NCBI GenBank assembly: GCA_013416795.1
Contig: RQSC01000023.1
Location: 8,968 to 20,654, forward strand
Direction of reading: 5' to 3'
Length of the DNA: 11,687 nt
Origin: Prasinococcaceae sp. CCMP 1430
Taxonomy: Eukaryota; Plantae; Prasinodermophyta
The position numbers were made by a program, and so were the translations under genes. Shown here piece after piece: positions 667-11,420 of this stretch (its first letter is position 1; each line of letters starts with the position of its first letter). The notes below the pieces were generated by a model, which had not been told where the DNA came from, made no database searches, and worked only from the letters and a program-made list of their open reading frames with translations.

Positions 667-1146
667 NNNNNNNNNNNNNNNNNNNNNNNNNNNNNNNNNN
701 NNNNNNNNNNNNNNNNNNNNNNNNNNNNNNNNNNNNNNNNNNNNNNNNNNNNNNNNNNNNNNNNNNNNNNNNNNNNNNNNNNNNNNNNNNNNNNNNNNNN
801 NNNNNNNNNNNNNNNNNNNNNNNNNNNNNNNNNNNNNNNNNNNNNNNNNNNNNNNNNNNNNNNNNNNNNNNNNNNNNNNNNNNNNNNNNNNNNNNNNNNN
901 NNNNNNNNNNNNNNNNNNNNNNNNNNNNNNNNNNNNNNNNNNNNNNNNNNNNNNNNNNNNNNNNNNNNNNNNNNNNNNNNNNNNNNNNNNNNNNNNNNNN
1001 NNNNNNNNNNNNNNNNNNNNNNNNNNNNNNNNNNNNNNNNNNNNNNNNNNNNNNNNNNNNNNNNNNNNNNNNNNNNNNNNNNNNNNNNNNNNNNNNNNNN
1101 NNNNNNNNNNNNNNNNNNNNNNNNNNNNNNNNNNNNNNNNNNNNNN
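667..1146. other. Assembly gap (480 N)
   Basis: Run of N. Confidence 0.99.
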
Positions 1147-1147
1147 G

Positions 1148-3088
1148 CGCACGCGCCCGGAGCGCGGCGCCTCGGCGGCCGCGTGGGGCCACGAGCCGCT
1201 GCGCGGGGGCGGGCTCACACTGTCCGTCTCCAACGTGGGCGACTCGCACTGCTACCTCGACACGGGCACGTCGGTTGCGCTGTGCAGCGCGGACCACCGC
1301 CTGGACACGTCCGCGCGCGAGCGCGAGCGCGTGAAGGCGTGCCCCGGCGGCAGCGTCGGGCGCAGCGCGCTCGAGGAGGGCGGCAAGGGCGTGGGCCCGC
1401 TGCGCGCGTGGCCGGGCGGCCTCGCGATGGCGCGCACGCTCGGCGACTGCGCGGCGCACCCGATCATCAGCGCCGAGCCGGAGACGCGCCAGGTGTACGT
1501 GCCGCGCGGCTGCGCGGCGCGCCTCATCATCGCCAGCGACGGCCTGTGGGACGGCCTGAGCGCCAAGGCGGCGGCGAAGCTCGTGCGCGCCAAGCCCGCC
1601 ACCACCGCGGCGCCCGCGCTCTGCCAGGCGGCCAAGAAGGCGCGCGGGCTGCGCGACGACATCACCGTGGTAGTCATCGACGTGCTGCCCGGCGGGGCGG
1701 GCGACACGGGCGCGCACTCGTCGCCTTTCGCGGGCAGGCGGGGGCGGCCCTGGGAGCCCATGGTTGTCGATGCGGACCGCCCGTCGGCGGCGGTGTCGAA
1801 GGCGCTCGGGGGCGAGCCGCCGGAGGAGGCCGCAGCCGACGCGGGCGCGAGCGGCGCCGGCGCAAACGGGGCCGAGGTCGACGTTGCGCCAGCAGATGGT
1901 CGGGGCGCCGACGGAGGCGCCGCGACGGTGGGCGTGACCCCCGCCTCGGCGGACGAGCGCGCGAGCGACCTGCGCGAGCTGGCGGCCGCGCAGGGCCTGC
2001 CGGTGGACGTGGTGCTCGCCAGCGCAGGCGTCTGTGGTGCCGAGACGGACGCCGGCGGCGAGGGATGGACCGACGTGCCGGTGAAGAAGTCGAGGCGCGC
2101 CGTCGCCTCCGCCGCCGCGCTCGCGGACGACGCCGATTCCGGCGCGGACGGGTGGATCGAGGTCAAGAGCGCGCGCGACGGTGACGCCGCCAAGCAGCAG
2201 CGGACGCAACAGCAGCGACAGCGGCAGCAGCATCGGCAGCAGCGACAACAGCAGGGCGGGCTTGCAGGTAGAGGCAGAGGTAGAGGTAGAGGGAACGGCG
2301 GCAGGGGCGTTGCTGGCGGCAGAGCCTCGCCACACGCGCTCGCGGAGACGCAGGAGCAGCTGCCCCGCCAGGGCGATGCACAGGAGGGCAAGGGCCAGCG
2401 CCAGCGCCAGCACACGAGCAACGGCCGTGGGGATGCCGGCGTGGAGGCCGAGGGCGCGCGTGCTGCCGCAGGAAACGCGGAAGGAGCAGACGGCGAGCAC
2501 GCGAGCATCCCGAACGGCGACGTCGCAGCGCCGGACGCCAAGCCTCGGCGCCACACCGGCAAGGGCAAGAACGGAAACGCCGGCAGAGGCAAGGGCACGG
2601 CCACGGGCACGCACGCGAGTGCCCGTAAGGGGGGCGCTGTGGGGGGCGTCCACGGCGGCGAGCTCGCCAACAAGTCAGCGCGCGTGAGCGGGCAGCCGCG
2701 TGAGCAGCAGCAGCGCCGGCAGGCGCAGGGCGGAAAAGGGCCGGGCCGCCAGCACGGCACGGAGCGCAAGGACTGCAAGGATGGGCCCAAGCAGCCGCGT
2801 GGCGACGCTGCGCCGCCGCCGGCGCCGCCGACCAACGGCATCATGGTTGGCAGCGTGCCCTGCGCGCCGGTGTCGGCCCGCAAACCGGCGCAGGCCGTGG
2901 GCGGCGCGGCAGGCGAGGGCGGCAACAGCGAGGACTCCGGCCGTCGGGGCCGTGGCGGCGGCCGCGGTAAGGGGCGGGGCGGCCGTGGCGGCGGCCGCGG
3001 CCGTGAGCGCGGGCGCGGGCGTGGCCGCGTTCCGGGCGCCGGTGGTGCCCCCGACAGCAGTGGCGCGTCCAGTGTGGCAGTGCACTGA
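1148..3088 (+). CDS. Protein phosphatase 2C (PPM family, plant-type clade with the GPLRxWPGGL motif), 5' partial, with a long low-complexity C-terminal tail
   Basis: PP2C motifs SNVGDSHC, DHRL, GPLRAWPGGLAMARTLGD, RLIIASDGLWD and RDDITVVVID. The catalytic domain ends near 1690 and the frame stays open to TGA 3086-3088. The N-terminal metal-binding motifs (ED, DGH) lie in the gap. Confidence 0.9.
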   Translation, partial: RTRPERGASAAAWGHEPLRGGGLTLSVSNVGDSHCYLDTGTSVALCSADHRLDTSARERERVKACPGGSVGRSALEEGGKGVGPLRAWPGGLAMARTLGDCAAHPIISAEPETRQVYVPRGCAARLIIASDGLWDGLSAKAAAKLVRAKPATTAAPALCQAAKKARGLRDDITVVVIDVLPGGAGDTGAHSSPFAGRRGRPWEPMVVDADRPSAAVSKALGGEPPEEAAADAGASGAGANGAEVDVAPADGRGADGGAATVGVTPASADERASDLRELAAAQGLPVDVVLASAGVCGAETDAGGEGWTDVPVKKSRRAVASAAALADDADSGADGWIEVKSARDGDAAKQQRTQQQRQRQQHRQQRQQQGGLAGRGRGRGRGNGGRGVAGGRASPHALAETQEQLPRQGDAQEGKGQRQRQHTSNGRGDAGVEAEGARAAAGNAEGADGEHASIPNGDVAAPDAKPRRHTGKGKNGNAGRGKGTATGTHASARKGGAVGGVHGGELANKSARVSGQPREQQQRRQAQGGKGPGRQHGTERKDCKDGPKQPRGDAAPPPAPPTNGIMVGSVPCAPVSARKPAQAVGGAAGEGGNSEDSGRRGRGGGRGKGRGGRGGGRGRERGRGRGRVPGAGGAPDSSGASSVAVH

Positions 3089-3200: not shown

Positions 3201-4769
3201 TCACAGCTCGTCCCTTGCGGCCTCGGCCTCGGCCCCGCGAGCGACGCGCGCCTCCCGCGCCCGGCGCGCGTCGCTCGCGGCGCGCGCTAGGAGCTCCTCG
3301 CCGCGCGCGTTGCGCGCCCTGCGCGCCATCGCGCGCGCTCCGCCGTCCTCCGCCGGTGCCCCGTGGGCGAGCAGAAGCGACGCCACGCGCTCTGCGCGCG
3401 CGGCGTCAGCGTCCTCAAGCGCGTACGCAAGCGCCGATAGACCTCTCCACCGCGCGCTCGCGTCGGCGCCACGCCCGAGCAGCGCCTCGACGACGCCAGC
3501 CTGCGCGGAAGTGAGGCGCGCGCGCGCAGCGGTCAGCGCACGCGCTCTCGTGTGCGCGCCACCGCGCTCGCTTGCGGCCTCGCAAGCGAGCGCCGCCGCG
3601 CGCGTCCGTCGGCTTACCCTTCGGTACTGCACCGCGAGCACCAGTGGTGTCACGCCCCCCATCGAGCGCGTCTCGATGTCGGCGCCGCCGTCTATGAGCG
3701 CGAGCGCCACGTCGACGTGTCCATTCTCGCACGCGGCGTGAAGCGCGGCCGCGCCATTGCCCACCTCGGCCGGCACGCGGCTCATCGGGTCGTACTCGAG
3801 CACCGCCTCCCAGCCGTCGGTCTCGGCGAGGGCGCTGCCACCGCCGTTACCCTGCGAGCGCAGGCGCTCCCTCTCGCGCTGCTTGTTCCACCCCCTGGGC
3901 CGCTTGGGCATCGCGAAGTCCGGCGCGGCGCCTAGACGCAGCAGCTCTCGCACGGCCTCGACGTGCCCGCGCTGCGAAGCCAAGTACAGCGCCGTCGTGT
4001 CCCCCTGCACTAGCGCGTCCACGCTCGCGCCCACGCATGCGGCTGCATGGGTACGATCCGTAGCATCGCCCGAGAGGAGCTGGCGGATCGCCGCGGGCTT
4101 GTTCGCGTCCGCAGCGGCGTGCAGCGGCGTCGCGCCGTTCGCCTTCCGCGCGTCCGCCCGCGCGCCCGCCTCGCACAGCGCCGCCACGACGCCCGCGGCG
4201 CCCACCTCGGCCGCAAAGTGCAGGGGCGACGTCCGCGCCCACGGATGCGCGCGGTCTGCCCGCGCGCCGTGGGTGAGCAGCGTGCGCACCATGGCCTCGT
4301 CGCCCAGCGACGCGGCCACCATCACGGGGGTGGCGCCGCCGGGTCCGACCGCGTCAGGGTCAGCGGCTTCCGTCGGCGCTGCCAGCAGCGCCGCCGCCTC
4401 GCGCGCGTCGCCCTCCGCCACGGCGACGTGCAGCCGCGCGTCGGCGCTCAGGTAGGCGAGCGCGCTCTCGCCGGCGCCCTCGCGCGCTCCGGCGCGCTCT
4501 CGCTCCCTTTCGCGGGCGACCGCGAGCGCGGGGGCCACCGCGAACGCCAGCAGCAGCCGTGCGCTGTCCACAGCGCCCGACGCAGCCTCCCTGTGGAGGT
4601 ACAGCGCCTCGTCGCGGGTGAGCGGTCGGGGCGCCGCGCCGCGCCGCTCTTCGCGCGGCGGCACGAGGCCTTCCTCGCCCGCAAAGGCCACCACGGCCGC
4701 GTACGCGGGCTGCACGACGGCGAGCGCGCCCTCTGCGGTGGCGAGCGCGCGCGCAAGCGCGTCGGCGCC
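3201..4769 (-). CDS. Ankyrin-repeat protein, exons 4769..3618 and 3500..3201 (5' exon unresolved), C-terminus RDEL
   Basis: Several ankyrin repeats: ATPVMVAASLGDEAMVRTLL, TSPLHFAAEVG, ATPLHAAADAN, TTALYLASQRGH, AALHAACENGH. Splicing restores VTPLVLAVQYRR|AGVVEALLGRGAD. Ends ...ARDEL-TGA at 3203-3201. An in-frame TGA at 4811 with a candidate acceptor NAG at 4772-4770 implies a further upstream exon. Confidence 0.85.
   Translation of the reverse strand, partial: GADALARALATAEGALAVVQPAYAAVVAFAGEEGLVPPREERRGAAPRPLTRDEALYLHREAASGAVDSARLLLAFAVAPALAVARERERERAGAREGAGESALAYLSADARLHVAVAEGDAREAAALLAAPTEAADPDAVGPGGATPVMVAASLGDEAMVRTLLTHGARADRAHPWARTSPLHFAAEVGAAGVVAALCEAGARADARKANGATPLHAAADANKPAAIRQLLSGDATDRTHAAACVGASVDALVQGDTTALYLASQRGHVEAVRELLRLGAAPDFAMPKRPRGWNKQRERERLRSQGNGGGSALAETDGWEAVLEYDPMSRVPAEVGNGAAALHAACENGHVDVALALIDGGADIETRSMGGVTPLVLAVQYRRVSRRTRAAALACEAASERGGAHTRARALTAARARLTSAQAGVVEALLGRGADASARWRGLSALAYALEDADAARAERVASLLLAHGAPAEDGGARAMARRARNARGEELLARAASDARRAREARVARGAEAEAARDEL
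3501..3617 (-). other. Spliceosomal intron (117 nt, phase 0) in the ankyrin gene
   Basis: GTAAGC donor, GCTGAC branch point (plus 3532-3537), CCGCGCAG acceptor. Removal restores an ankyrin repeat. Confidence 0.85.
3564..3593. repeat. Perfect inverted repeat, 13-bp stem with 4-nt loop
   Basis: GCGCTCGCTTGCG-gcct-CGCAAGCGAGCGC read directly. Confidence 0.9.
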
Positions 4770-6162: not shown

Positions 6163-7010
6163 NNNNNNNNNNNNNNNNNNNNNNNNNNNNNNNNNNNNNN
6201 NNNNNNNNNNNNNNNNNNNNNNNNNNNNNNNNNNNNNNNNNNNNNNNNNNNNNNNNNNNNNNNNNNNNNNNNNNNNNNNNNNNNNNNNNNNNNNNNNNNN
6301 NNNNNNNNNNNNNNNNNNNNNNNNNNNNNNNNNNNNNNNNNNNNNNNNNNNNNNNNNNNNNNNNNNNNNNNNNNNNNNNNNNNNNNNNNNNNNNNNNNNN
6401 NNNNNNNNNNNNNNNNNNNNNNNNNNNNNNNNNNNNNNNNNNNNNNNNNNNNNNNNNNNNNNNNNNNNNNNNNNNNNNNNNNNNNNNNNNNNNNNNNNNN
6501 NNNNNNNNNNNNNNNNNNNNNNNNNNNNNNNNNNNNNNNNNNNNNNNNNNNNNNNNNNNNNNNNNNNNNNNNNNNNNNNNNNNNNNNNNNNNNNNNNNNN
6601 NNNNNNNNNNNNNNNNNNNNNNNNNNNNNNNNNNNNNNNNNNNNNNNNNNNNNNNNNNNNNNNNNNNNNNNNNNNNNNNNNNNNNNNNNNNNNNNNNNNN
6701 NNNNNNNNNNNNNNNNNNNNNNNNNNNNNNNNNNNNNNNNNNNNNNNNNNNNNNNNNNNNNNNNNNNNNNNNNNNNNNNNNNNNNNNNNNNNNNNNNNNN
6801 NNNNNNNNNNNNNNNNNNNNNNNNNNNNNNNNNNNNNNNNNNNNNNNNNNNNNNNNNNNNNNNNNNNNNNNNNNNNNNNNNNNNNNNNNNNNNNNNNNNN
6901 NNNNNNNNNNNNNNNNNNNNNNNNNNNNNNNNNNNNNNNNNNNNNNNNNNNNNNNNNNNNNNNNNNNNNNNNNNNNNNNNNNNNNNNNNNNNNNNNNNNN
7001 NNNNNNNNNN
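6163..7010. other. Assembly gap (848 N), preceded by (GCGCG)n; hides the BIN4 start
   Basis: Run of N. Confidence 0.99.
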
Positions 7011-7011
7011 G

Positions 7012-7830
7012 GGCGCGGGCGCGGCGGGCTCGGGTGGGACGGGCGCGAAGGACGCGAAGGGCGGCGCCGCCAAGCAGGACGTGGCGGCGGCCTGCGGCGG
7101 CAAGAACGACTGGCAGGTGCCCGCGGCGCCGGCGGACGGCTCGACCCCGCTGACCATCCCGGATAAGTTCGGCGCCCTCACCGGCGCGCGCGTACTCCTG
7201 CAGCTCCCGCCCGACTTCGACATGATGGGCGACAGCGGCGCGGTGGGTCGCGTGTCGGACGCCGCCCCGGGGGAGCCCGGCGGCGGCGGCGTGCAGGTCG
7301 ACCTGAAGGGCGTGCTGTACGACTGCGTGGCGGCGCCCTCCGCGACGCTCATGGTGGTCTCCAAGCAGGACGCCGGCGCCAAGGTGGAGATGCTCACCAA
7401 CACGGTCGTGCGAATGCAGAAGCTCAGGGGGATCGACGGGGGCGATCAACGCTTCGGAGCGCTGCTGCGCGAGTCGGACGACGACGACGACCTGGACCGG
7501 CACGGTGAGCGCTGCGCCTGCGACCTGCGCCGGCCGTCGCCGCGAGCGCGCGCGACGCGCTCGCTCGCGCGCGGGCTTGCACCGCAGAGGCCGCTGCTGA
7601 CGATGGCGCCGCGCCGCGCAGATTTCGGCGGGTCCCAGCGCGTGCGCGACGAGCGTCCCGCGAAGAAGGCCAAGGCGACTGCAGCGATCGGTGCGCTCGG
7701 AGCGCTCGCACTTGTTCTCGCTCGCGGCGCGGGCGCGGGCGGGCGCGGCAGGGGCCGCGGGCGGGGGAGGGGCGGCCGCGGTGGGGCCAAGTCGAAGGCT
7801 TCCTCGAAGGCTGCGAGCAAGGTGAAGTGA
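7012..7830 (+). CDS. BIN4: BIN4/MIDGET-like DNA topoisomerase VI accessory protein, 5' partial, exons <7012..7504 and 7622..7830
   Basis: PLTIPDKF...VLLQLPPDFDMMGDSGAVGRV...VDLKGVLYD...SATLMVVS...AKVEMLTNTVVRM matches the recalled BIN4 core (LPLVLP.KV...IDLSGDMGAVGR...LDLKGTIY...SRTFCVV...AKIEAIMNDFIQL). An acidic patch is followed by a basic RG-rich tail. Confidence 0.8.
   Translation, partial: GAGAAGSGGTGAKDAKGGAAKQDVAAACGGKNDWQVPAAPADGSTPLTIPDKFGALTGARVLLQLPPDFDMMGDSGAVGRVSDAAPGEPGGGGVQVDLKGVLYDCVAAPSATLMVVSKQDAGAKVEMLTNTVVRMQKLRGIDGGDQRFGALLRESDDDDDLDRHGERCACDLRRPSPRARATRSLARGLAPQRPLLTMAPRRADFGGSQRVRDERPAKKAKATAAIGALGALALVLARGAGAGGRGRGRGRGRGGRGGAKSKASSKAASKVK
7505..7621 (+). other. Spliceosomal intron (117 nt, phase 1) in BIN4
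   Basis: GTGAGC donor, GCTGAC branch point at 7596-7601, CCGCGCAG acceptor. The frame is preserved (G|AT = Asp). Confidence 0.8.
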
Positions 7831-7882
7831 GCGCTGCATGGGGCGGGGCAGTGCTGTGGACGCATGTGGATTGCAACGCCGA

Positions 7883-10273
7883 TTACTTGCCGGCCCTGCC
7901 GCCCTTGCCGTTCTTGCCGTCCGCGCCGCGCCGATTCTCCTTGTTGTTGGCCGCGGCTGCCTCCTTCTCGTCCTCGGGGTCCACATCGAACGTAAAAAGC
8001 TGGCCGGTTGCTTTCTGCTCGGTGTCTTTCAGGGAGCCGCGCTTGTTGACGCGCGGGCGGTGGTTGGATGGGTCGCGGCGGAAGGTGACGTCCAGCTGCT
8101 TCAGGAACGAGTTGAATCCCTGGACGAGCCCGACGGGCGACAACGCCGTGCACTCCTTGCCCGGGGTGCCCTCGTACACCACCACCTTGTCGGCCAGCGC
8201 TGCGGCCATAACGAAGTCGTGTTCGATCACGAAGGCAGTCTTGCGCTGGTGGTCCACGACCCAGCGGCGGATGACCTTGGCTGCAACGATGCGCTGCTCG
8301 CAGTCGAGCCCGGCGCTGGGTTCGTCGAGCAAGTAGACCGAGGCCCGGCGGCCGAGGCAAAGCACGATCGCGAGGCGCTGCAACTCGCCGCCCGAGAGCG
8401 TTTGCACGCGCTTGTCGTACAGATCGCCCACCTTGAGCGGTTTCAGCACGAGAACGTTGAAGAGGGCGTCGGCGCAGACGCCCTGAATCTCTTTCTCGAT
8501 GATGTCCTGCACCGTGCCCTTGAACTTGCGCAACCGCGGCGCGTACACCTGCCGCTTGTAGCTCACGCCGAGGCCCGCAAGCGAGCAGGCGTCTGCCTCG
8601 CCCTTCGCGCCACCCCCGCTTTCGTCGCCCTCCGGCTTGTCGAAGTGCCCCGCGAGCATGTCCATGAAGGTCGTCTTGCCGCAGCCGTTCTGACCGAGCA
8701 GCCCCACGCACTCGGCGCCCTCGAAGTGGCCCGCGTTCACGTGGAGCGTGAAGCTGCTCGATTCGCCCTTGAGTGTGCGCGACATGGCCGGGTAGTCGAC
8801 GCGGCCCATGACCTCGCCTGCGCCCCCAGGGCCGAGCAGCGCATCGCCCTGGGAGCTCGCAGACGACACGCTGAAGGATATGGCCTCGGCGCGGAAGCGC
8901 ATATTTTCCGCAGGAAAGTAGCCCGCCAGGTAGTTGTTGATGCCGTTGGTCACGCTCGCGACCTTGGTGACGACGCCATAGGCGCCCGGCTCGCCGTAGA
9001 GGCAGCATATTTGGTCGGACATGTAGTCGAGCACGGCGAGGTCGTGCTCGACCACCACCACGTAGCGGGCCTTGTCGCTCGTGGTGCGCAGGTTTGCCAG
9101 GTCGCGGATCACCTCGGTGGCCGTCATGCGCTGTTTGATGTCCAAAAAGCTCGATGCCTCGTCGAACATGTACACGTCCGCGTCTTGGCAGCAGACGACG
9201 CAGATGGCGAAGCGCTGCAGCTCGCCGCCACTCAGCTCCTGCACCTCGCGGTCGAGCACGGCGCCCAGCTCGAGGCGCGCAACCAGCTCCTCCATGGCGC
9301 CGCGCTGGTCGCGCTGCCGCAGCACGTCGCCCACCACGCGCCCGCGCAGCTTGCGCACGTAGTCCGTGTCGAGCTGCACCTTGGTGACCACACGAATGTC
9401 CTCTTCGAGCAGGCGGCTCAGGTACGCCTGCACAGCGCTGCCACGGTAGTAGTTGAGGATCTCCTGCCAGCTGGGCGGGTCGTTCAGCCGCCCGAGGTTG
9501 GGCTTGAGCTTACCCGCGAGCACCTTGAGCGCGGTGGACTTGCCGATGCCGTTGGTGCCCAGCAAGCCCAGGACGCAGCCCGCGCGCGGCGTCGGCAGGC
9601 CGTGCAGCTTGAACGCGTTCTCGCCGTAGCGGTGCGTGCAGTCCGTCTCCAGGTTGGAAGGCAGGTTGACGATCGTGACCGCGTCGCCGGGGCATTTCTT
9701 GGCGCGCATCAGGCACGCGGCGCAGGCATCCTTTGCGAGGAGCGCGCGGCGGCGGTCAGCGCGCTTGCGGGGACGAGGCGGGCGCCGCGCTGCTGCGCGC
9801 GCGTCGCGCGCGGCGCACGAACCTCGGAGATGACGATGCGCCCCGCCGCGGGTACCGGCGGCGCTCCCTCGACTTCCTGCTGGGCGCGCGCCTCCTTCGG
9901 CACGCGCTGCGGCTTCTGCAGCGTGATGCACTGCGGGCGCAGGAGGGGCGGGCCGGCCGGCGGTGCCGTCAGCGAGAGGGGCGGAGGATGCCTTTGCGGA
10001 CGCGGACGCAGGCGCACGCCGGCGAGCTCGGGCGCCCACGCGCACGCATGCGCGCGCGCCCGCTTGCGCTTGCGCTTGCGCAGGCCGTACCTCGCGGCCG
10101 CAGGCGCGCGCGTAGCGGCTGAGGTACTGAAAGGCCTCCGAGTTTGGCTTGCACCTCGCCTGGTCGAGCAGCACGATGCGCCGCCGCTGCAGCGCGTCTG
10201 CGGCGCCGTCCCCCTCGCCGCGCGTCTCGCCGCCGCCGCCCTTGCGCTGCAGCCCCTGCTTGCGCGACGCCAT
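7883..10273 (-). CDS. ABCE1-like: ABCE1/RLI-like twin ABC ATPase (712 aa), exons 10273..10091, 9930..9823, 9730..7883; divergent Fe-S domain
   Basis: Two Walker A motifs (GTNGIGKST, GQNGCGKTT), two LSGGELQ signatures, Walker B DEASS and DEPSA, EHD switches, helix-loop-helix PPSWQEILNYYRGS, hinges GYFPAENMRFR and FRRDPSNHRPRVNK, and IVNLPSNLE. Spliced N-terminus RIVLLDQARCKP...CIT...IVISE|DACAAC...KKCP is colinear with ABCE1. Confidence 0.93.
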   Translation of the reverse strand: MASRKQGLQRKGGGGETRGEGDGAADALQRRRIVLLDQARCKPNSEAFQYLSRYARACGREVRPAQAQAQAGARACVRVGARARRRAPASASAKASSAPLADGTAGRPAPPAPAVHHAAEAAARAEGGARPAGSRGSAAGTRGGAHRHLRGSCAARDARAAARRPPRPRKRADRRRALLAKDACAACLMRAKKCPGDAVTIVNLPSNLETDCTHRYGENAFKLHGLPTPRAGCVLGLLGTNGIGKSTALKVLAGKLKPNLGRLNDPPSWQEILNYYRGSAVQAYLSRLLEEDIRVVTKVQLDTDYVRKLRGRVVGDVLRQRDQRGAMEELVARLELGAVLDREVQELSGGELQRFAICVVCCQDADVYMFDEASSFLDIKQRMTATEVIRDLANLRTTSDKARYVVVVEHDLAVLDYMSDQICCLYGEPGAYGVVTKVASVTNGINNYLAGYFPAENMRFRAEAISFSVSSASSQGDALLGPGGAGEVMGRVDYPAMSRTLKGESSSFTLHVNAGHFEGAECVGLLGQNGCGKTTFMDMLAGHFDKPEGDESGGGAKGEADACSLAGLGVSYKRQVYAPRLRKFKGTVQDIIEKEIQGVCADALFNVLVLKPLKVGDLYDKRVQTLSGGELQRLAIVLCLGRRASVYLLDEPSAGLDCEQRIVAAKVIRRWVVDHQRKTAFVIEHDFVMAAALADKVVVYEGTPGKECTALSPVGLVQGFNSFLKQLDVTFRRDPSNHRPRVNKRGSLKDTEQKATGQLFTFDVDPEDEKEAAAANNKENRRGADGKNGKGGRAGK
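9731..9822 (-). other. Intron 2 of the ABCE-like gene (92 nt, phase 0)
   Basis: GTTCGT donor, GCTGAC branch point (plus 9755-9760), AAAG acceptor. Joins ISE to DAC, as in ABCE1 ISE-TLC. Confidence 0.85.
9931..10090 (-). other. Intron 1 of the ABCE-like gene (160 nt, phase 0), contains (CAAGCG)3
   Basis: GTACGG donor, GCTGAC branch point (plus 9968-9973), pyrimidine-rich CCCGCAG acceptor. Joins GRE to CIT, as in ABCE1 GKL-CIE. Confidence 0.85.
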
Positions 10274-10549
10274 CCCGCCGGCGGGCGGCGGTACGCGCGC
10301 GCACNNNNNNNCCCGCGCGCGCGTGCCCGTTCGGCGCGCGCCCGTTCGCGAGCGCCGCGCGAGCGCGCGCAATCGACGGGAAACACACCGGAAGATGAGG
10401 CGAACAGAGCTGATCGGGCAGGCGAAGCGCCCCGAAACGGCGGAACGCGGAGGCGAAAGCGCGCGGGGCCGGAAGCACCTTCGAGACCCCGTGCGCCGCA
10501 CCGGTTGGGGTAGTGCGCGCATGGGCGCACTCGGGAGCGAGTGTGTGTG

Positions 10550-10589
10550 GGGGGGGTGGGGGTGGGGGCGGGGTGGGGGGCAAGGGGGG
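10550..10589 (+). repeat. G-run cluster (G-quadruplex-capable)
   Basis: Six runs of 4 or more G with short loops, read directly. Confidence 0.6.
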
Positions 10590-10613
10590 CACAGTCGCCA
10601 CTCCGCTACCACT

Positions 10614-10649
10614 GCCGCCGCTGCTGCTGCCGCCGCCGCTGCTGCTGCT
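10614..10649. repeat. Compound trinucleotide repeat (GCC)2(GCT)3(GCC)3(GCT)4
   Basis: Read directly. Confidence 0.9.
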
Positions 10650-10782
10650 GTCAAGGTGGGCGAGGAACGGTCGAAGTCCTCGTGAGCCACAGACGACGAC
10701 GTCCGCGCCGGGACCGGGGAGGGGAGCGGTGGGAGGGCCCGGGGAGGGGCGGGAGAGGGCCCGCCCGGCACCTCGGCACGCA

Positions 10783-10808
10783 CGCGCGCGCGCGAGAGAG
10801 AGAGAGAG
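10783..10808. repeat. Compound microsatellite (CG)6 running into (GA)7
   Basis: cgcgcgcgcgcgagagagagagagag read directly. Confidence 0.9.
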
Positions 10809-10943
10809 CGCACGCGCGAGCGCTGCGGCAGGCGCTCGCCAGGCGCTGCGGCTGGGGTGAGCGTCTGGTGTGCACGTCCCCCACCCGGGCTGCACTCGCT
10901 CGCGAGTGCGGCCGGCGACCAGCGGCGCTTAGCTCGGCAAGCG

Positions 10944-11420
10944 ATGGGCCGGGCCGAGAAGAAGGCGAGCACGAGCGCGCGCGAGGCCGGCGCGCGCGCA
11001 GCGACCGTCTTCCATCTGACGCTCGCGCAGTGCGTGCTCGACATGGCGCTCCGCCTGCTCACGCAACAGCGACCAACTCCTGCGACCGTCGCCGTCGCCA
11101 ACAAGGTCCACCCCCGCATCGGCCTCGCGGACCTCTTGGAGAGCGAGGGCGTGGCTACAGAGAGGCTTCTGGCGCACCTGCGCGGCGCCGACTGCATGCG
11201 GCTCGCGGCGAGCTGCCGCTCGGCGCGCCACGCCGTGGCGGGCTCCCGCGAGGCGGCGCTGCGCGTGCAGCGCTGCCTGGCGGAGAGGGCGCTCGGGGAG
11301 CACGCGTGGGCGTTTGACGCCTTCCTCATCGCCCGCTGGGACCCCTCCATCGCCCGCCACCTGCGGCCTGCGCGCACCGCCCTCCGTCCCTTGCGAGCGA
11401 CGCCGTGCTGGAGTCGCTAG
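10944..11420 (+). CDS. Hypothetical 158-aa protein with an F-box-like motif
   Basis: ATG at 10944, TAG at 11418-11420, codon usage like the neighbouring genes. LADLLESEGVATERLLAHLRGADCMRLAASCRSARHAV resembles the F-box pattern L..L...V...IL.HL...D..RL...CR..R..V. Confidence 0.5.
   Translation: MGRAEKKASTSAREAGARAATVFHLTLAQCVLDMALRLLTQQRPTPATVAVANKVHPRIGLADLLESEGVATERLLAHLRGADCMRLAASCRSARHAVAGSREAALRVQRCLAERALGEHAWAFDAFLIARWDPSIARHLRPARTALRPLRATPCWSR

What the first reader, a model, noticed from the sequence alone, without database searches (positions are those of the whole stretch)
9689..10183. ABCE1/RLI-like ribosome ATPase that has lost half of its Fe-S cluster ligands
Seen: after splicing, the N-domain reads C41-KPNSEAFQYLSRYARA-C58-GRE-C62...C100-AA-C103-LM-R106-AKK-C110-P. 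Established: ABCE1 has CX4CX3CX3CP...CX2CX2CX3CP (human C16/21/25/29 and C55/58/61/65) binding two [4Fe-4S] clusters, and this domain is needed for ribosome splitting. Here C21, C25, C29 and C61 align to E, Y, Y and R, so each cluster loses ligands. Both ATPase sites, the helix-loop-helix and both hinges are intact and the splice sites are clean, which argues against a pseudogene. Inference: this is probably a second ABCE paralog that binds ribosomes and hydrolyses ATP without a normal Fe-S wedge. Possible roles are a non-splitting or hibernation/quality-control factor, or an iron- and oxidation-independent recycler. A naive translation misses this because the 1164-aa ORF reads through both introns and skips exon 2.
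Basis: partly seen in the sequence, partly recalled or inferred. Interest (0 to 1): 0.78.

Follow-up and report, generated by a model that had tools for sequence, protein, structure and literature searches.

The report
ABCE1 paralog with rebuilt metal domain
This marine alga expresses a second, divergent version of the ribosome-recycling ATPase ABCE1, shared with diatoms and other marine algae, in which the normally eight-cysteine iron-sulfur domain keeps only four invariant cysteines; I found no description of this version in the paper library, and it may make the protein need less iron.

Summary
A three-exon gene on the minus strand (10273..7883) encodes a 712-aa ABCE1 homologue. Both splice junctions are confirmed by cDNA contigs, and a relative that lacks intron 2 confirms the second one. 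The N-domain cysteines are 41, 58, 62, 100, 103 and 110. Canonical C21, C25, C29 and C61 are gone.

It is not a pseudogene. dN/dS is 0.16 against an 88%-identical relative. Both ATP sites, the HLH motif and the hinges are intact. Transcripts occur in a culture cDNA set and in marine metatranscriptomes.

It belongs to a large, well-supported clade (100/100) of ABCE-like proteins that lack the Pfam RLI and Fer4 domains. The clade is found in diatoms, Triparma, pelagophytes and unlabelled marine eukaryotes. It coexists with canonical ABCE1 in Seminavis robusta.

Within the clade, exactly four N-domain cysteines are invariant (C58-x3-C62 and C100-x2-C103), and C61 is always Arg or Lys. The AlphaFold model keeps the ABCE1 N-domain fold. 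The domain therefore looks remodelled around one four-cysteine metal site rather than merely degraded.

The metal, the function, and the presence of a canonical copy in this genome are untested. No paper in the library describes this clade.

The parts
10091..10273 (-). Exon 1 (M1-E61): basic N-terminus, strand beta-1 (RIVLLD), K-C41-K-P loop, and the helix that replaces the CX4CX3CX3CP motif. C41 codon is 10153-10151; C58 codon is 10102-10100.
   Evidence: cDNA contig X1 record 3 covers 10301..10091 with 0 differences. TARA contig L001 gives the same peptide.
9931..10090 (-). Intron 1, 160 nt, GT..AG.
   Evidence: A cDNA joint skips exactly 9931-10090. Relative L009 also has this intron.
9823..9930 (-). 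Exon 2 (C62-E97): C62 codon 9930-9928, strand beta-2 (CITL), a lineage-specific insertion of about 20 residues relative to human ABCE1 in the variable loop, and strand beta-3 (RIVISE).
   Evidence: Exact nucleotide match in L001.
9731..9822 (-). Intron 2, 92 nt, GT..AG.
   Evidence: A cDNA contig ending at exon 3 carries a 15-letter overhang equal to the end of exon 2. The intron is absent from relative L009, where the junction peptide RIVISE|DACAAC is contiguous.
7883..9730 (-). Exon 3 (D98-K712 plus stop): the second Cys motif, the cantilever, NBD1 with HLH, hinge 1, NBD2 and hinge 2.
   Evidence: cDNA contigs cover 7890-9732 with 0 differences.
9689..9724 (-). Remodelled second motif C100-AA-C103-LM-R106-AKK-C110-P111. 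The canonical motif is CX2CX2CX3CP. C61 is replaced by Arg.
   Evidence: The C61 position is R or K in 134 of 136 clade members.
9647..9673 (-). Cantilever strand and linker IVNLPSNLE.
   Evidence: Aligned to human IVNLPSNLE. Coordinates.
9533..9559 (-). NBD1 Walker A, GTNGIGKST.
9419..9478 (-). ABCE-specific helix-loop-helix region of NBD1.
   Evidence: Continuous alignment to human ABCE1. Coordinates.
9152..9235 (-). NBD1 signature LSGGELQR and Walker B VYMFDE.
8669..8695 (-). NBD2 Walker A, GQNGCGKTT.
8315..8398 (-). NBD2 signature LSGGELQR and Walker B VYLLDE.
8042..8086 (-). Hinge 2 motif TFRRDPSNHRPRVNK, the small-subunit anchor.
   Evidence: Invariant R/D/R-P-R/N-K columns. Coordinates.

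Best explanation
The locus encodes an expressed member of a conserved ABCE subfamily that I did not find described in the paper library. It is a paralog of the ribosome-recycling ATPase ABCE1/Rli1.

Shown: it keeps the whole ABCE1 machine. That includes two catalytically complete ATP sites, the NBD1 helix-loop-helix, both hinges, the cantilever, the K-P loop that NBD2 pushes on, and the R7 and K36 contact residues. The AlphaFold model of relative P0009 keeps the ABCE1 N-domain fold, docked as in pre-splitting ABCE1. The two-cluster ligand set (eight Cys) is replaced by four invariant cysteines, C58-x3-C62 and C100-x2-C103, and canonical C61 is fixed as Arg or Lys.

Inferred: the four cysteines hold one structural metal, either zinc or a single Fe-S cluster. 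This keeps the N-domain rigid. The protein then binds the small-subunit side of ribosomes and uses ATP-driven closure to swing this wedge, as ABCE1 does, with far less dependence on iron and on oxidant-labile clusters. It most likely works beside a canonical ABCE1.
For: Family identity: E 6e-174 to human ABCE1 over residues 55-598, and two ABC_tran domains.

Fold: the model of clade member P0009 (pLDDT 86.8 overall, N-domain 88-95) superposes on rabbit ABCE1 residues 4-598 (590 of 595 aligned, 2.8 A, Z 39) and on P. abyssi ABCE1 (585 of 593).

Clade: 100/100 support and separate from canonical ABCE1. Rooted with Asgard archaea, it lies inside eukaryotes.

Coexistence with canonical ABCE1: Seminavis robusta has P0100 (paralog) and P0244 (canonical).

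Invariance: C44, C48, C63 and C66 of P0009 are the only invariant N-domain cysteines in 83 full-length members. All Walker, signature and H-loop residues are invariant too. Frequencies over 136 members are.

Loss of the Fe-S signature: Pfam RLI and Fer4 models miss the paralog N-domains but hit canonical controls.

Selection and expression: dN/dS is 0.156.

Background on the role of the FeS domain and its contact residues comes from PMC7196836. Its oxidant lability is described in PMC3442406.
Against: - No coordinates were available, so I did not measure whether the four cysteines converge in space.
- The metal is unknown.
- There is no functional or ribosome-binding data.
- The h44-contacting stretch of the first motif is replaced by a different helix, so the post-splitting docking may differ.
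- The clade evolves about 2.6 times faster than canonical ABCE1 between Seminavis and Triparma (path lengths). It shows class-specific changes near the D-loops: Y246F, S579C, H523D and R96G.
- A canonical ABCE1 in this genome was not demonstrated.
Confidence: 0.6

Rival explanations
1. The four invariant cysteines still bind one Fe-S cluster ([4Fe-4S] or [2Fe-2S]). The protein would be a one-cluster ABCE, not an iron-free one. It would still depend on the cytosolic Fe-S assembly pathway.
For: C100 and C103 are the first two ligands of one canonical cluster. C58 follows helix alpha-1 much as canonical C29 does (secondary structure). A faint Fer4_21 hit (E 0.063) covers residues 45-79 of P0009.
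Against: The CX2CX2CX3CP signature and the Cys-Pro ligand of motif 1 are gone, and an Arg or Lys sits at C61. CX3C plus CX2C at a helix N-terminus is equally typical of structural zinc sites (general knowledge). No Fer4 model passes its threshold.
Confidence: 0.3
2. It is a non-splitting specialist. The changed N-domain no longer acts as a wedge, and the protein is a ribosome-bound regulator such as an anti-association, hibernation or quality-control factor, or it has a role away from ribosomes.
For: The first-motif surface that contacts h44 in post-splitting complexes (PMC7196836) is replaced. Evolution is faster and there are class-specific substitutions. Distribution among diatoms is patchy: no named hit from T. 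pseudonana or P. tricornutum appears among the best 120.
Against: All elements that couple ATP closure to N-domain movement are conserved: the K-P loop, the cantilever, R7, K36, hinges 1 and 2, and both catalytic sites. A mere binder would not need two fully conserved hydrolytic sites.
Confidence: 0.2
3. It is the only ABCE of this organism, so the canonical gene was replaced.
For: No canonical ABCE1 from this genome was seen.
Against: Seminavis robusta has both forms. Within the genus Triparma both forms occur, the paralog in T. laevis and the canonical form in three other species. Canonical ABCE1 is reported in all eukaryotes examined (PMC6088178).
Confidence: 0.08
4. It is a pseudogene, or an artefact of the assembly or the gene model.
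For: There is a 7-N gap 32 nt upstream of the ATG. The window is GC-rich and full of spurious ORFs.
Against: Spliced cDNA shows 0 differences. An independent metagenome contig gives the same peptide. dN/dS is 0.16. More than 130 homologues share the same pattern.
Confidence: 0.02

Closest known systems
Canonical ABCE1 / Rli1 (human, yeast, archaeal; PDB 5LZV, 3J16, 3BK7)
   Same: Twin NBDs, HLH, hinges 1 and 2, cantilever, Y-loop, K-P loop and the overall fold (Z 39, 2.4-2.8 A over about 570-590 residues). The match is about 50% identical in the body (E about 1e-174; 52-53% over the structurally aligned residues of relative P0009). The origin is eukaryotic.
   Different: Four of the eight cluster ligands are absent (C21, C25, C29, C61). 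The Pfam PF04068 and PF00037 signatures are lost. A new invariant Cys sits at position 34, and the non-ligand C38 has become one of four invariant cysteines. Evolution is faster.
Plant ABCE paralogs (Arabidopsis ABCE1/ABCE2 and others; PMC11190730, PMC6088178)
   Same: They are extra ABCE copies alongside an essential one.
   Different: Plant paralogs are at least 78% identical to AtABCE2 and keep all FeS motifs. That survey explicitly discarded sequences lacking them. The clade here is only about 50% identical to canonical ABCE1 and has a rebuilt N-domain.
ABCF ribosome ATPases (EttA, ABCF1, ARE-ABCF)
   Same: They are soluble twin-NBD ATPases that act on ribosomes without any Fe-S cluster.
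   Different: They are a different subfamily with an inter-NBD linker (PtIM) in place of an N-terminal wedge and hinges. The structural match is far weaker (TM about 0.45, E about 1e-17 to 1e-18 against 3e-70 for ABCE1).
Iron-sparing protein substitutions in marine phytoplankton (flavodoxin for ferredoxin; general knowledge)
   Same: An iron-rich protein is backed up by an iron-poor version. This paralog occurs mainly in marine algae, including Southern Ocean diatoms (Fragilariopsis kerguelensis, Thalassiosira antarctica, Proboscia).
   Different: This is only an analogy. No regulation by iron was tested, and here the substitute is a paralog of the same protein.

Membership tests
ABCE subfamily of ABC ATPases | Two ABC nucleotide-binding domains with Walker A, Q-loop, signature, Walker B Asp-Glu and H-loop in both sites | tested here: met
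   PF00005 hits twice. All motif residues are present in the window protein and invariant in 83 clade members.
ABCE subfamily of ABC ATPases | ABCE-specific helix-loop-helix insertion in NBD1 and a bipartite hinge (hinge 2 with R-R-D-P..R-P-R-x-N-K) | tested here: met
   The alignment to human ABCE1 is continuous across both regions. The model superposes over residues 4-598. The hinge 2 columns are invariant across paralog and canonical rows.
ABCE subfamily of ABC ATPases | Phylogenetic placement with ABCE proteins | tested here: met
   It falls inside the eukaryotic ABCE group when rooted with 11 archaeal ABCE1 sequences (100/100 for eukaryotes plus paralogs versus archaea).
Canonical ABCE1/Rli1 (orthologue of the essential recycling factor) | N-terminal domain with eight cysteines, CX4CX3CX3CP and CX2CX2CX3CP, binding two [4Fe-4S] clusters | tested here: not met
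   Only C16, C55, C58 and C65 equivalents are present. PF04068 and PF00037 do not hit paralog N-domains but do hit the canonical controls P0244 and P0251.
Canonical ABCE1/Rli1 (orthologue of the essential recycling factor) | Groups with canonical ABCE1 of related organisms | tested here: not met
   It sits in a separate clade on a stem of 0.6-0.84 substitutions per site, with 100/100 support. Seminavis robusta has a member on each side.
Canonical ABCE1/Rli1 (orthologue of the essential recycling factor) | Splits 80S ribosomes with eRF1 or Pelota and is essential | not testable with these tools
   This needs biochemistry or genetics.
Structural four-cysteine metal site (zinc-knuckle or treble-clef-like, or a single Fe-S site) | Four cysteine sulfurs converging on one metal | not testable with these tools
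   Sequence invariance and secondary-structure context fit: a CX3C loop before beta-2, and CX2C at a helix N-terminus.

The most novel reading that the evidence does not exclude
A family of ribosome-recycling ATPases, either ancient or spread among algae by gene transfer, has replaced ABCE1's two oxidant-labile [4Fe-4S] clusters with a single zinc-type four-cysteine site. Marine phytoplankton use it to keep ribosome recycling running under iron scarcity or oxidative stress. This would be a flavodoxin-like backup for one of the most conserved Fe-S proteins of eukaryotes.
Probability: 0.25. Interest if true: 0.82.

Novelty: new variant of a known kind. Interest (0 to 1): 0.62.

Why it matters
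ABCE1 is among the most conserved proteins of eukaryotes and archaea. Its eight-cysteine, two-cluster domain is treated as universal and essential (PMC6088178), and it is regarded as a weak point under oxidative stress (PMC3442406).

A widespread, selected and expressed paralog keeps the whole machine but rebuilds that domain around four cysteines. It is a natural experiment on what the clusters are for: structure only, or sensing. It would also link translation to iron economy in ocean phytoplankton.

It affects annotation as well. These proteins are currently labelled 'ABCE1' or 'ABC transporter domain-containing protein'. Surveys that filter on FeS motifs discard them.

Tried and rejected
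- Searching the scan's earlier notes for a canonical ABCE1 in this genome, by words and by sequence, gave nothing.
- I tested whether P0110, the best canonical hit, came from the same organism. Its loci are 44% GC against 73% here, so it does not. P0141 is 50% GC. P0147 had no DNA on file.
- A screen of amino-acid composition for a GC-rich canonical candidate found none.
- The ESM Atlas look-ups gave only canonical or fragment clusters and no useful taxa.
- Cluster look-ups gave organism names for only a few members. The taxa of the window's own subclade therefore stay unlabelled. That this genome is a prasinophyte-grade green alga rests only on unverified earlier notes.
- MAFFT aligned C58 with canonical C25 through two large gaps. 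I rejected this in favour of the one-gap HMMER alignment to the solved structures, which puts C58 at M34.
- Pseudogene and artefact readings are rejected.
Full report
**Observation**

The window is about 73% GC with four N runs. On the minus strand an ATG at 10273 opens a three-exon gene:
- exon 1, 10273..10091
- intron 1, 160 nt, GT..AG
- exon 2, 9930..9823
- intron 2, 92 nt, GT..AG
- exon 3, 9730..7883

The spliced CDS is 2139 nt and encodes 712 aa with one terminal stop. The mechanical 1164-aa ORF 7883..11377 reads through both introns and reads exon 2 out of frame.

**Splicing and expression**

Run X1 comes from the window's organism and holds 0.81 of the sampled words. One of its contigs joins 10091 directly to 9930, skipping the 160 nt with CT..AC ends on the plus strand. 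Another covers 9013-9732 and continues with 15 letters that equal the 3' end of exon 2; with the two ambiguous bases this gives a 17-nt bridge over intron 2. All X1 pieces have 0 differences.

Marine metatranscriptome run X2 holds near-identical pieces of exon 3. The 88%-identical relative on Logan contig L009 has intron 1 but no intron 2, so RIVISE|DACAAC is contiguous in its DNA. TARA metagenome contig L001 matches window 10304..7011 at 98.6% and encodes identical exon 1 and exon 2 peptides. Base-call error and a wrong exon model are therefore excluded.

**What it is**

Exon 3 alone matches human, rabbit and yeast ABCE1/Rli1 at E about 1e-174 and archaeal ABCE1 at about 1e-138. Pfam finds two ABC_tran domains. 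Walker A, Q-loop, signature, Walker B D-E and H-loop are present in both sites. So are the HLH region, the cantilever IVNLPSNLE, the Y-loop and the hinge 2 motif.

HMMER alignment of a clade member's N-domain to solved human ABCE1 gives this mapping:

| Window residue | Canonical position |
|---|---|
| C41 | C16 |
| C58 | M34 |
| C62 | C38 |
| C100 | C55 |
| C103 | C58 |
| R106 | C61 |
| C110 | C65 |

Nothing cysteine-like falls at C21, C25 or C29. Pfam Fer4_RLI and Fer4 hit the canonical controls (P0244, P0251) but none of four paralog N-domains.

**A conserved clade**

The word-index protein search returned about 115 full-length proteins of 620-750 aa among the best 120. They are 50-88% identical to the window protein, and all lack PF04068 and PF00037. 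Members that carry a name are:
- Seminavis robusta, Corethron hystrix, Pseudictyota dubia and Triparma laevis
- Synedropsis, Proboscia alata, Thalassiosira antarctica, an unclassified pelagophyte and a Picozoa single-cell assembly
- Pseudo-nitzschia australis and P. heimii, and Fragilariopsis kerguelensis

No named hit from T. pseudonana, P. tricornutum or F. cylindrus appeared among the best 120 of a diatom-paralog query. This suggests patchy retention; it is an inference from non-appearance in a capped search.

A search with a canonical query returned canonical ABCE1 from the same lineages. These include Seminavis robusta (P0244), three Triparma species, and Chrysophaeum, Rhizochromulina and many diatoms. 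Seminavis robusta thus has both forms.

**Phylogeny**

In a 100-sequence ML tree, paralogs (59) and canonical proteins (41) are split by one branch (SH-aLRT 100, length about 0.84). Triparma is sister to the diatoms on both sides.

Rooted with 11 archaeal ABCE1 sequences, mostly Asgard, fetched from genome contigs, the careful tree gives:
- archaea, 100/100
- paralog clade, 100/100
- canonical monophyly, only 81/78

The paralog is therefore of eukaryotic origin, but the time of duplication is unresolved. It could be an old duplication followed by many losses. It could equally be a later duplication with acceleration and spread among algae.

The Seminavis-Triparma path length is about 1.0 in the paralog clade and about 0.39 in the canonical clade. 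Earlier unverified notes of this scan call the genome a prasinophyte-grade green alga. A related member sits on a compact, intron-poor TARA contig.

**Selection**

Nei-Gojobori dN/dS against L009 is 0.156 over 644 codons. It is 0.23 for the 62 N-domain codons, which include the variable loop.

**The N-domain is remodelled, not merely degraded**

In 83 full-length clade members the only invariant N-domain cysteines are P0009 C44, C48, C63 and C66, which are window C58, C62, C100 and C103. Over 136 members the counts are:

| Window position | Residue counts |
|---|---|
| C58 | Cys 134/134 |
| C62 | Cys 134/134 |
| C100 | Cys 136/136 |
| C103 | Cys 135/136 |
| C61 position (R106) | Arg/Lys 134/136 |
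| C41 | Cys 96/136, otherwise V/I/L |
| C110 | Cys 110/136, otherwise A/T/S |

Diatoms add a cysteine one position after the lost C61 (56/136).

The AlphaFold2 model of P0009 was built from the 83-row alignment. It has pLDDT 86.8 overall and 88-95 over residues 21-80. Its topology is beta-alpha-beta-beta-alpha-beta. A 9-residue helix stands where the CX4CX3CX3CP motif was. C44-x3-C48 lies in the loop entering beta-2, and C63-x2-C66 lies at the N-terminus of the second helix.

The model superposes on rabbit ABCE1 residues 4-598 (590 of 595 aligned, 2.8 A, Z 39.1) and on P. abyssi ABCE1 (585 of 593, 2.6 A). It fits pre-splitting states better than post-splitting states.

Elements that PMC7196836 identifies as coupling ATP-site closure to N-domain movement or as contacting the small subunit are conserved across both classes. 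These are the K-P loop, R7, K36, the cantilever and hinges 1 and 2. The first-motif stretch that contacts h44 is replaced. The window's insertion of about 20 residues sits in the loop that the same paper describes as variable and facing away from the ribosome.

Only nine positions are fixed differently in the two classes. They include C61R, R96G, Y246F, H523D and S579C.

**Mechanism**

Shown: this is an intact, expressed, selected ABCE-type twin ATPase. Its N-domain has an ABCE1-like fold and an invariant CX3C...CX2C set.

Inferred: the four cysteines hold one structural metal. I put zinc somewhat ahead of a single Fe-S cluster. The protein would act on ribosomes as ABCE1 does, beside a canonical copy, with less dependence on iron and on oxidant-labile clusters. 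The lability is described in PMC3442406, which also reports that the FeS domain appears to have a structural role.

**Literature**

Seven full-text searches found no description of an ABCE paralog lacking the eight-cysteine set. The plant ABCE survey removed sequences lacking FeS motifs and reports at least 78% identity among those it kept. The 2018 review states eight cysteines and one or two genes per genome. Within the held library the clade is undescribed. Subscription journals are not covered.

**Verdict**

The paralog reading is supported at clade level, but not proven for this genome. The 'half-lost ligands' reading should become 'a rebuilt site of four invariant cysteines'. This is a new variant of a known kind, of moderately high interest.

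The large representative search was not used.

Noticed in passing
L009:1-700 versus window 9731-9822: The 88%-identical relative has intron 1 but lacks intron 2. This is an intron presence/absence difference between close relatives.
   Followed up: partly
window 10305-10311: A 7-N gap lies 32 nt upstream of the start codon. TARA contig L001 reads through this place, and the cDNA contig reaches only 10301.
   Followed up: partly
clade members such as P0100, P0055 and P0099 (N-domain): Diatom members carry CX2CX3CX2C(P), with an extra Cys one position after the lost C61 (56 of 136 rows). They often have Val in place of C41. The Cys set is still being reshuffled within the clade.
   Followed up: partly
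L012, L014, L015, L016: Heimdall- and Kari-archaeal ABCE1 already have the 'C38' cysteine (G-x-x-C-I-I/V-L), which is not a cluster ligand in eukaryotes. The other archaeal sequences fetched lack it.
   Followed up: no
L011, L017, L023, L025, L026: ABCE1 pieces 65-71% identical to eukaryotic proteins sit in MAGs labelled delta-proteobacterium, Cryomorphaceae, FCB group and Rubritalea. This is probably eukaryotic contamination of the bins.
   Followed up: no
window 1148-3085 (+) and 3204-4715 (-): The neighbouring ORFs carry a PP2C phosphatase domain (E 1e-16) and ankyrin repeats (E 3e-32). There is no evident link to the ABCE gene.
   Followed up: partly
window 667-1146 and 6163-7010: Large N runs of 480 and 848 bases interrupt the neighbouring genes.
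   Followed up: no
L031:5743-7767: A related paralog (P0023) is intronless. It sits on a very gene-dense 36.9-kb TARA contig beside linker histone, Evr1/Alr, Vps39, PX/Vps5 and Sec7-BIG genes, so it comes from a compact picoeukaryote genome.
   Followed up: no
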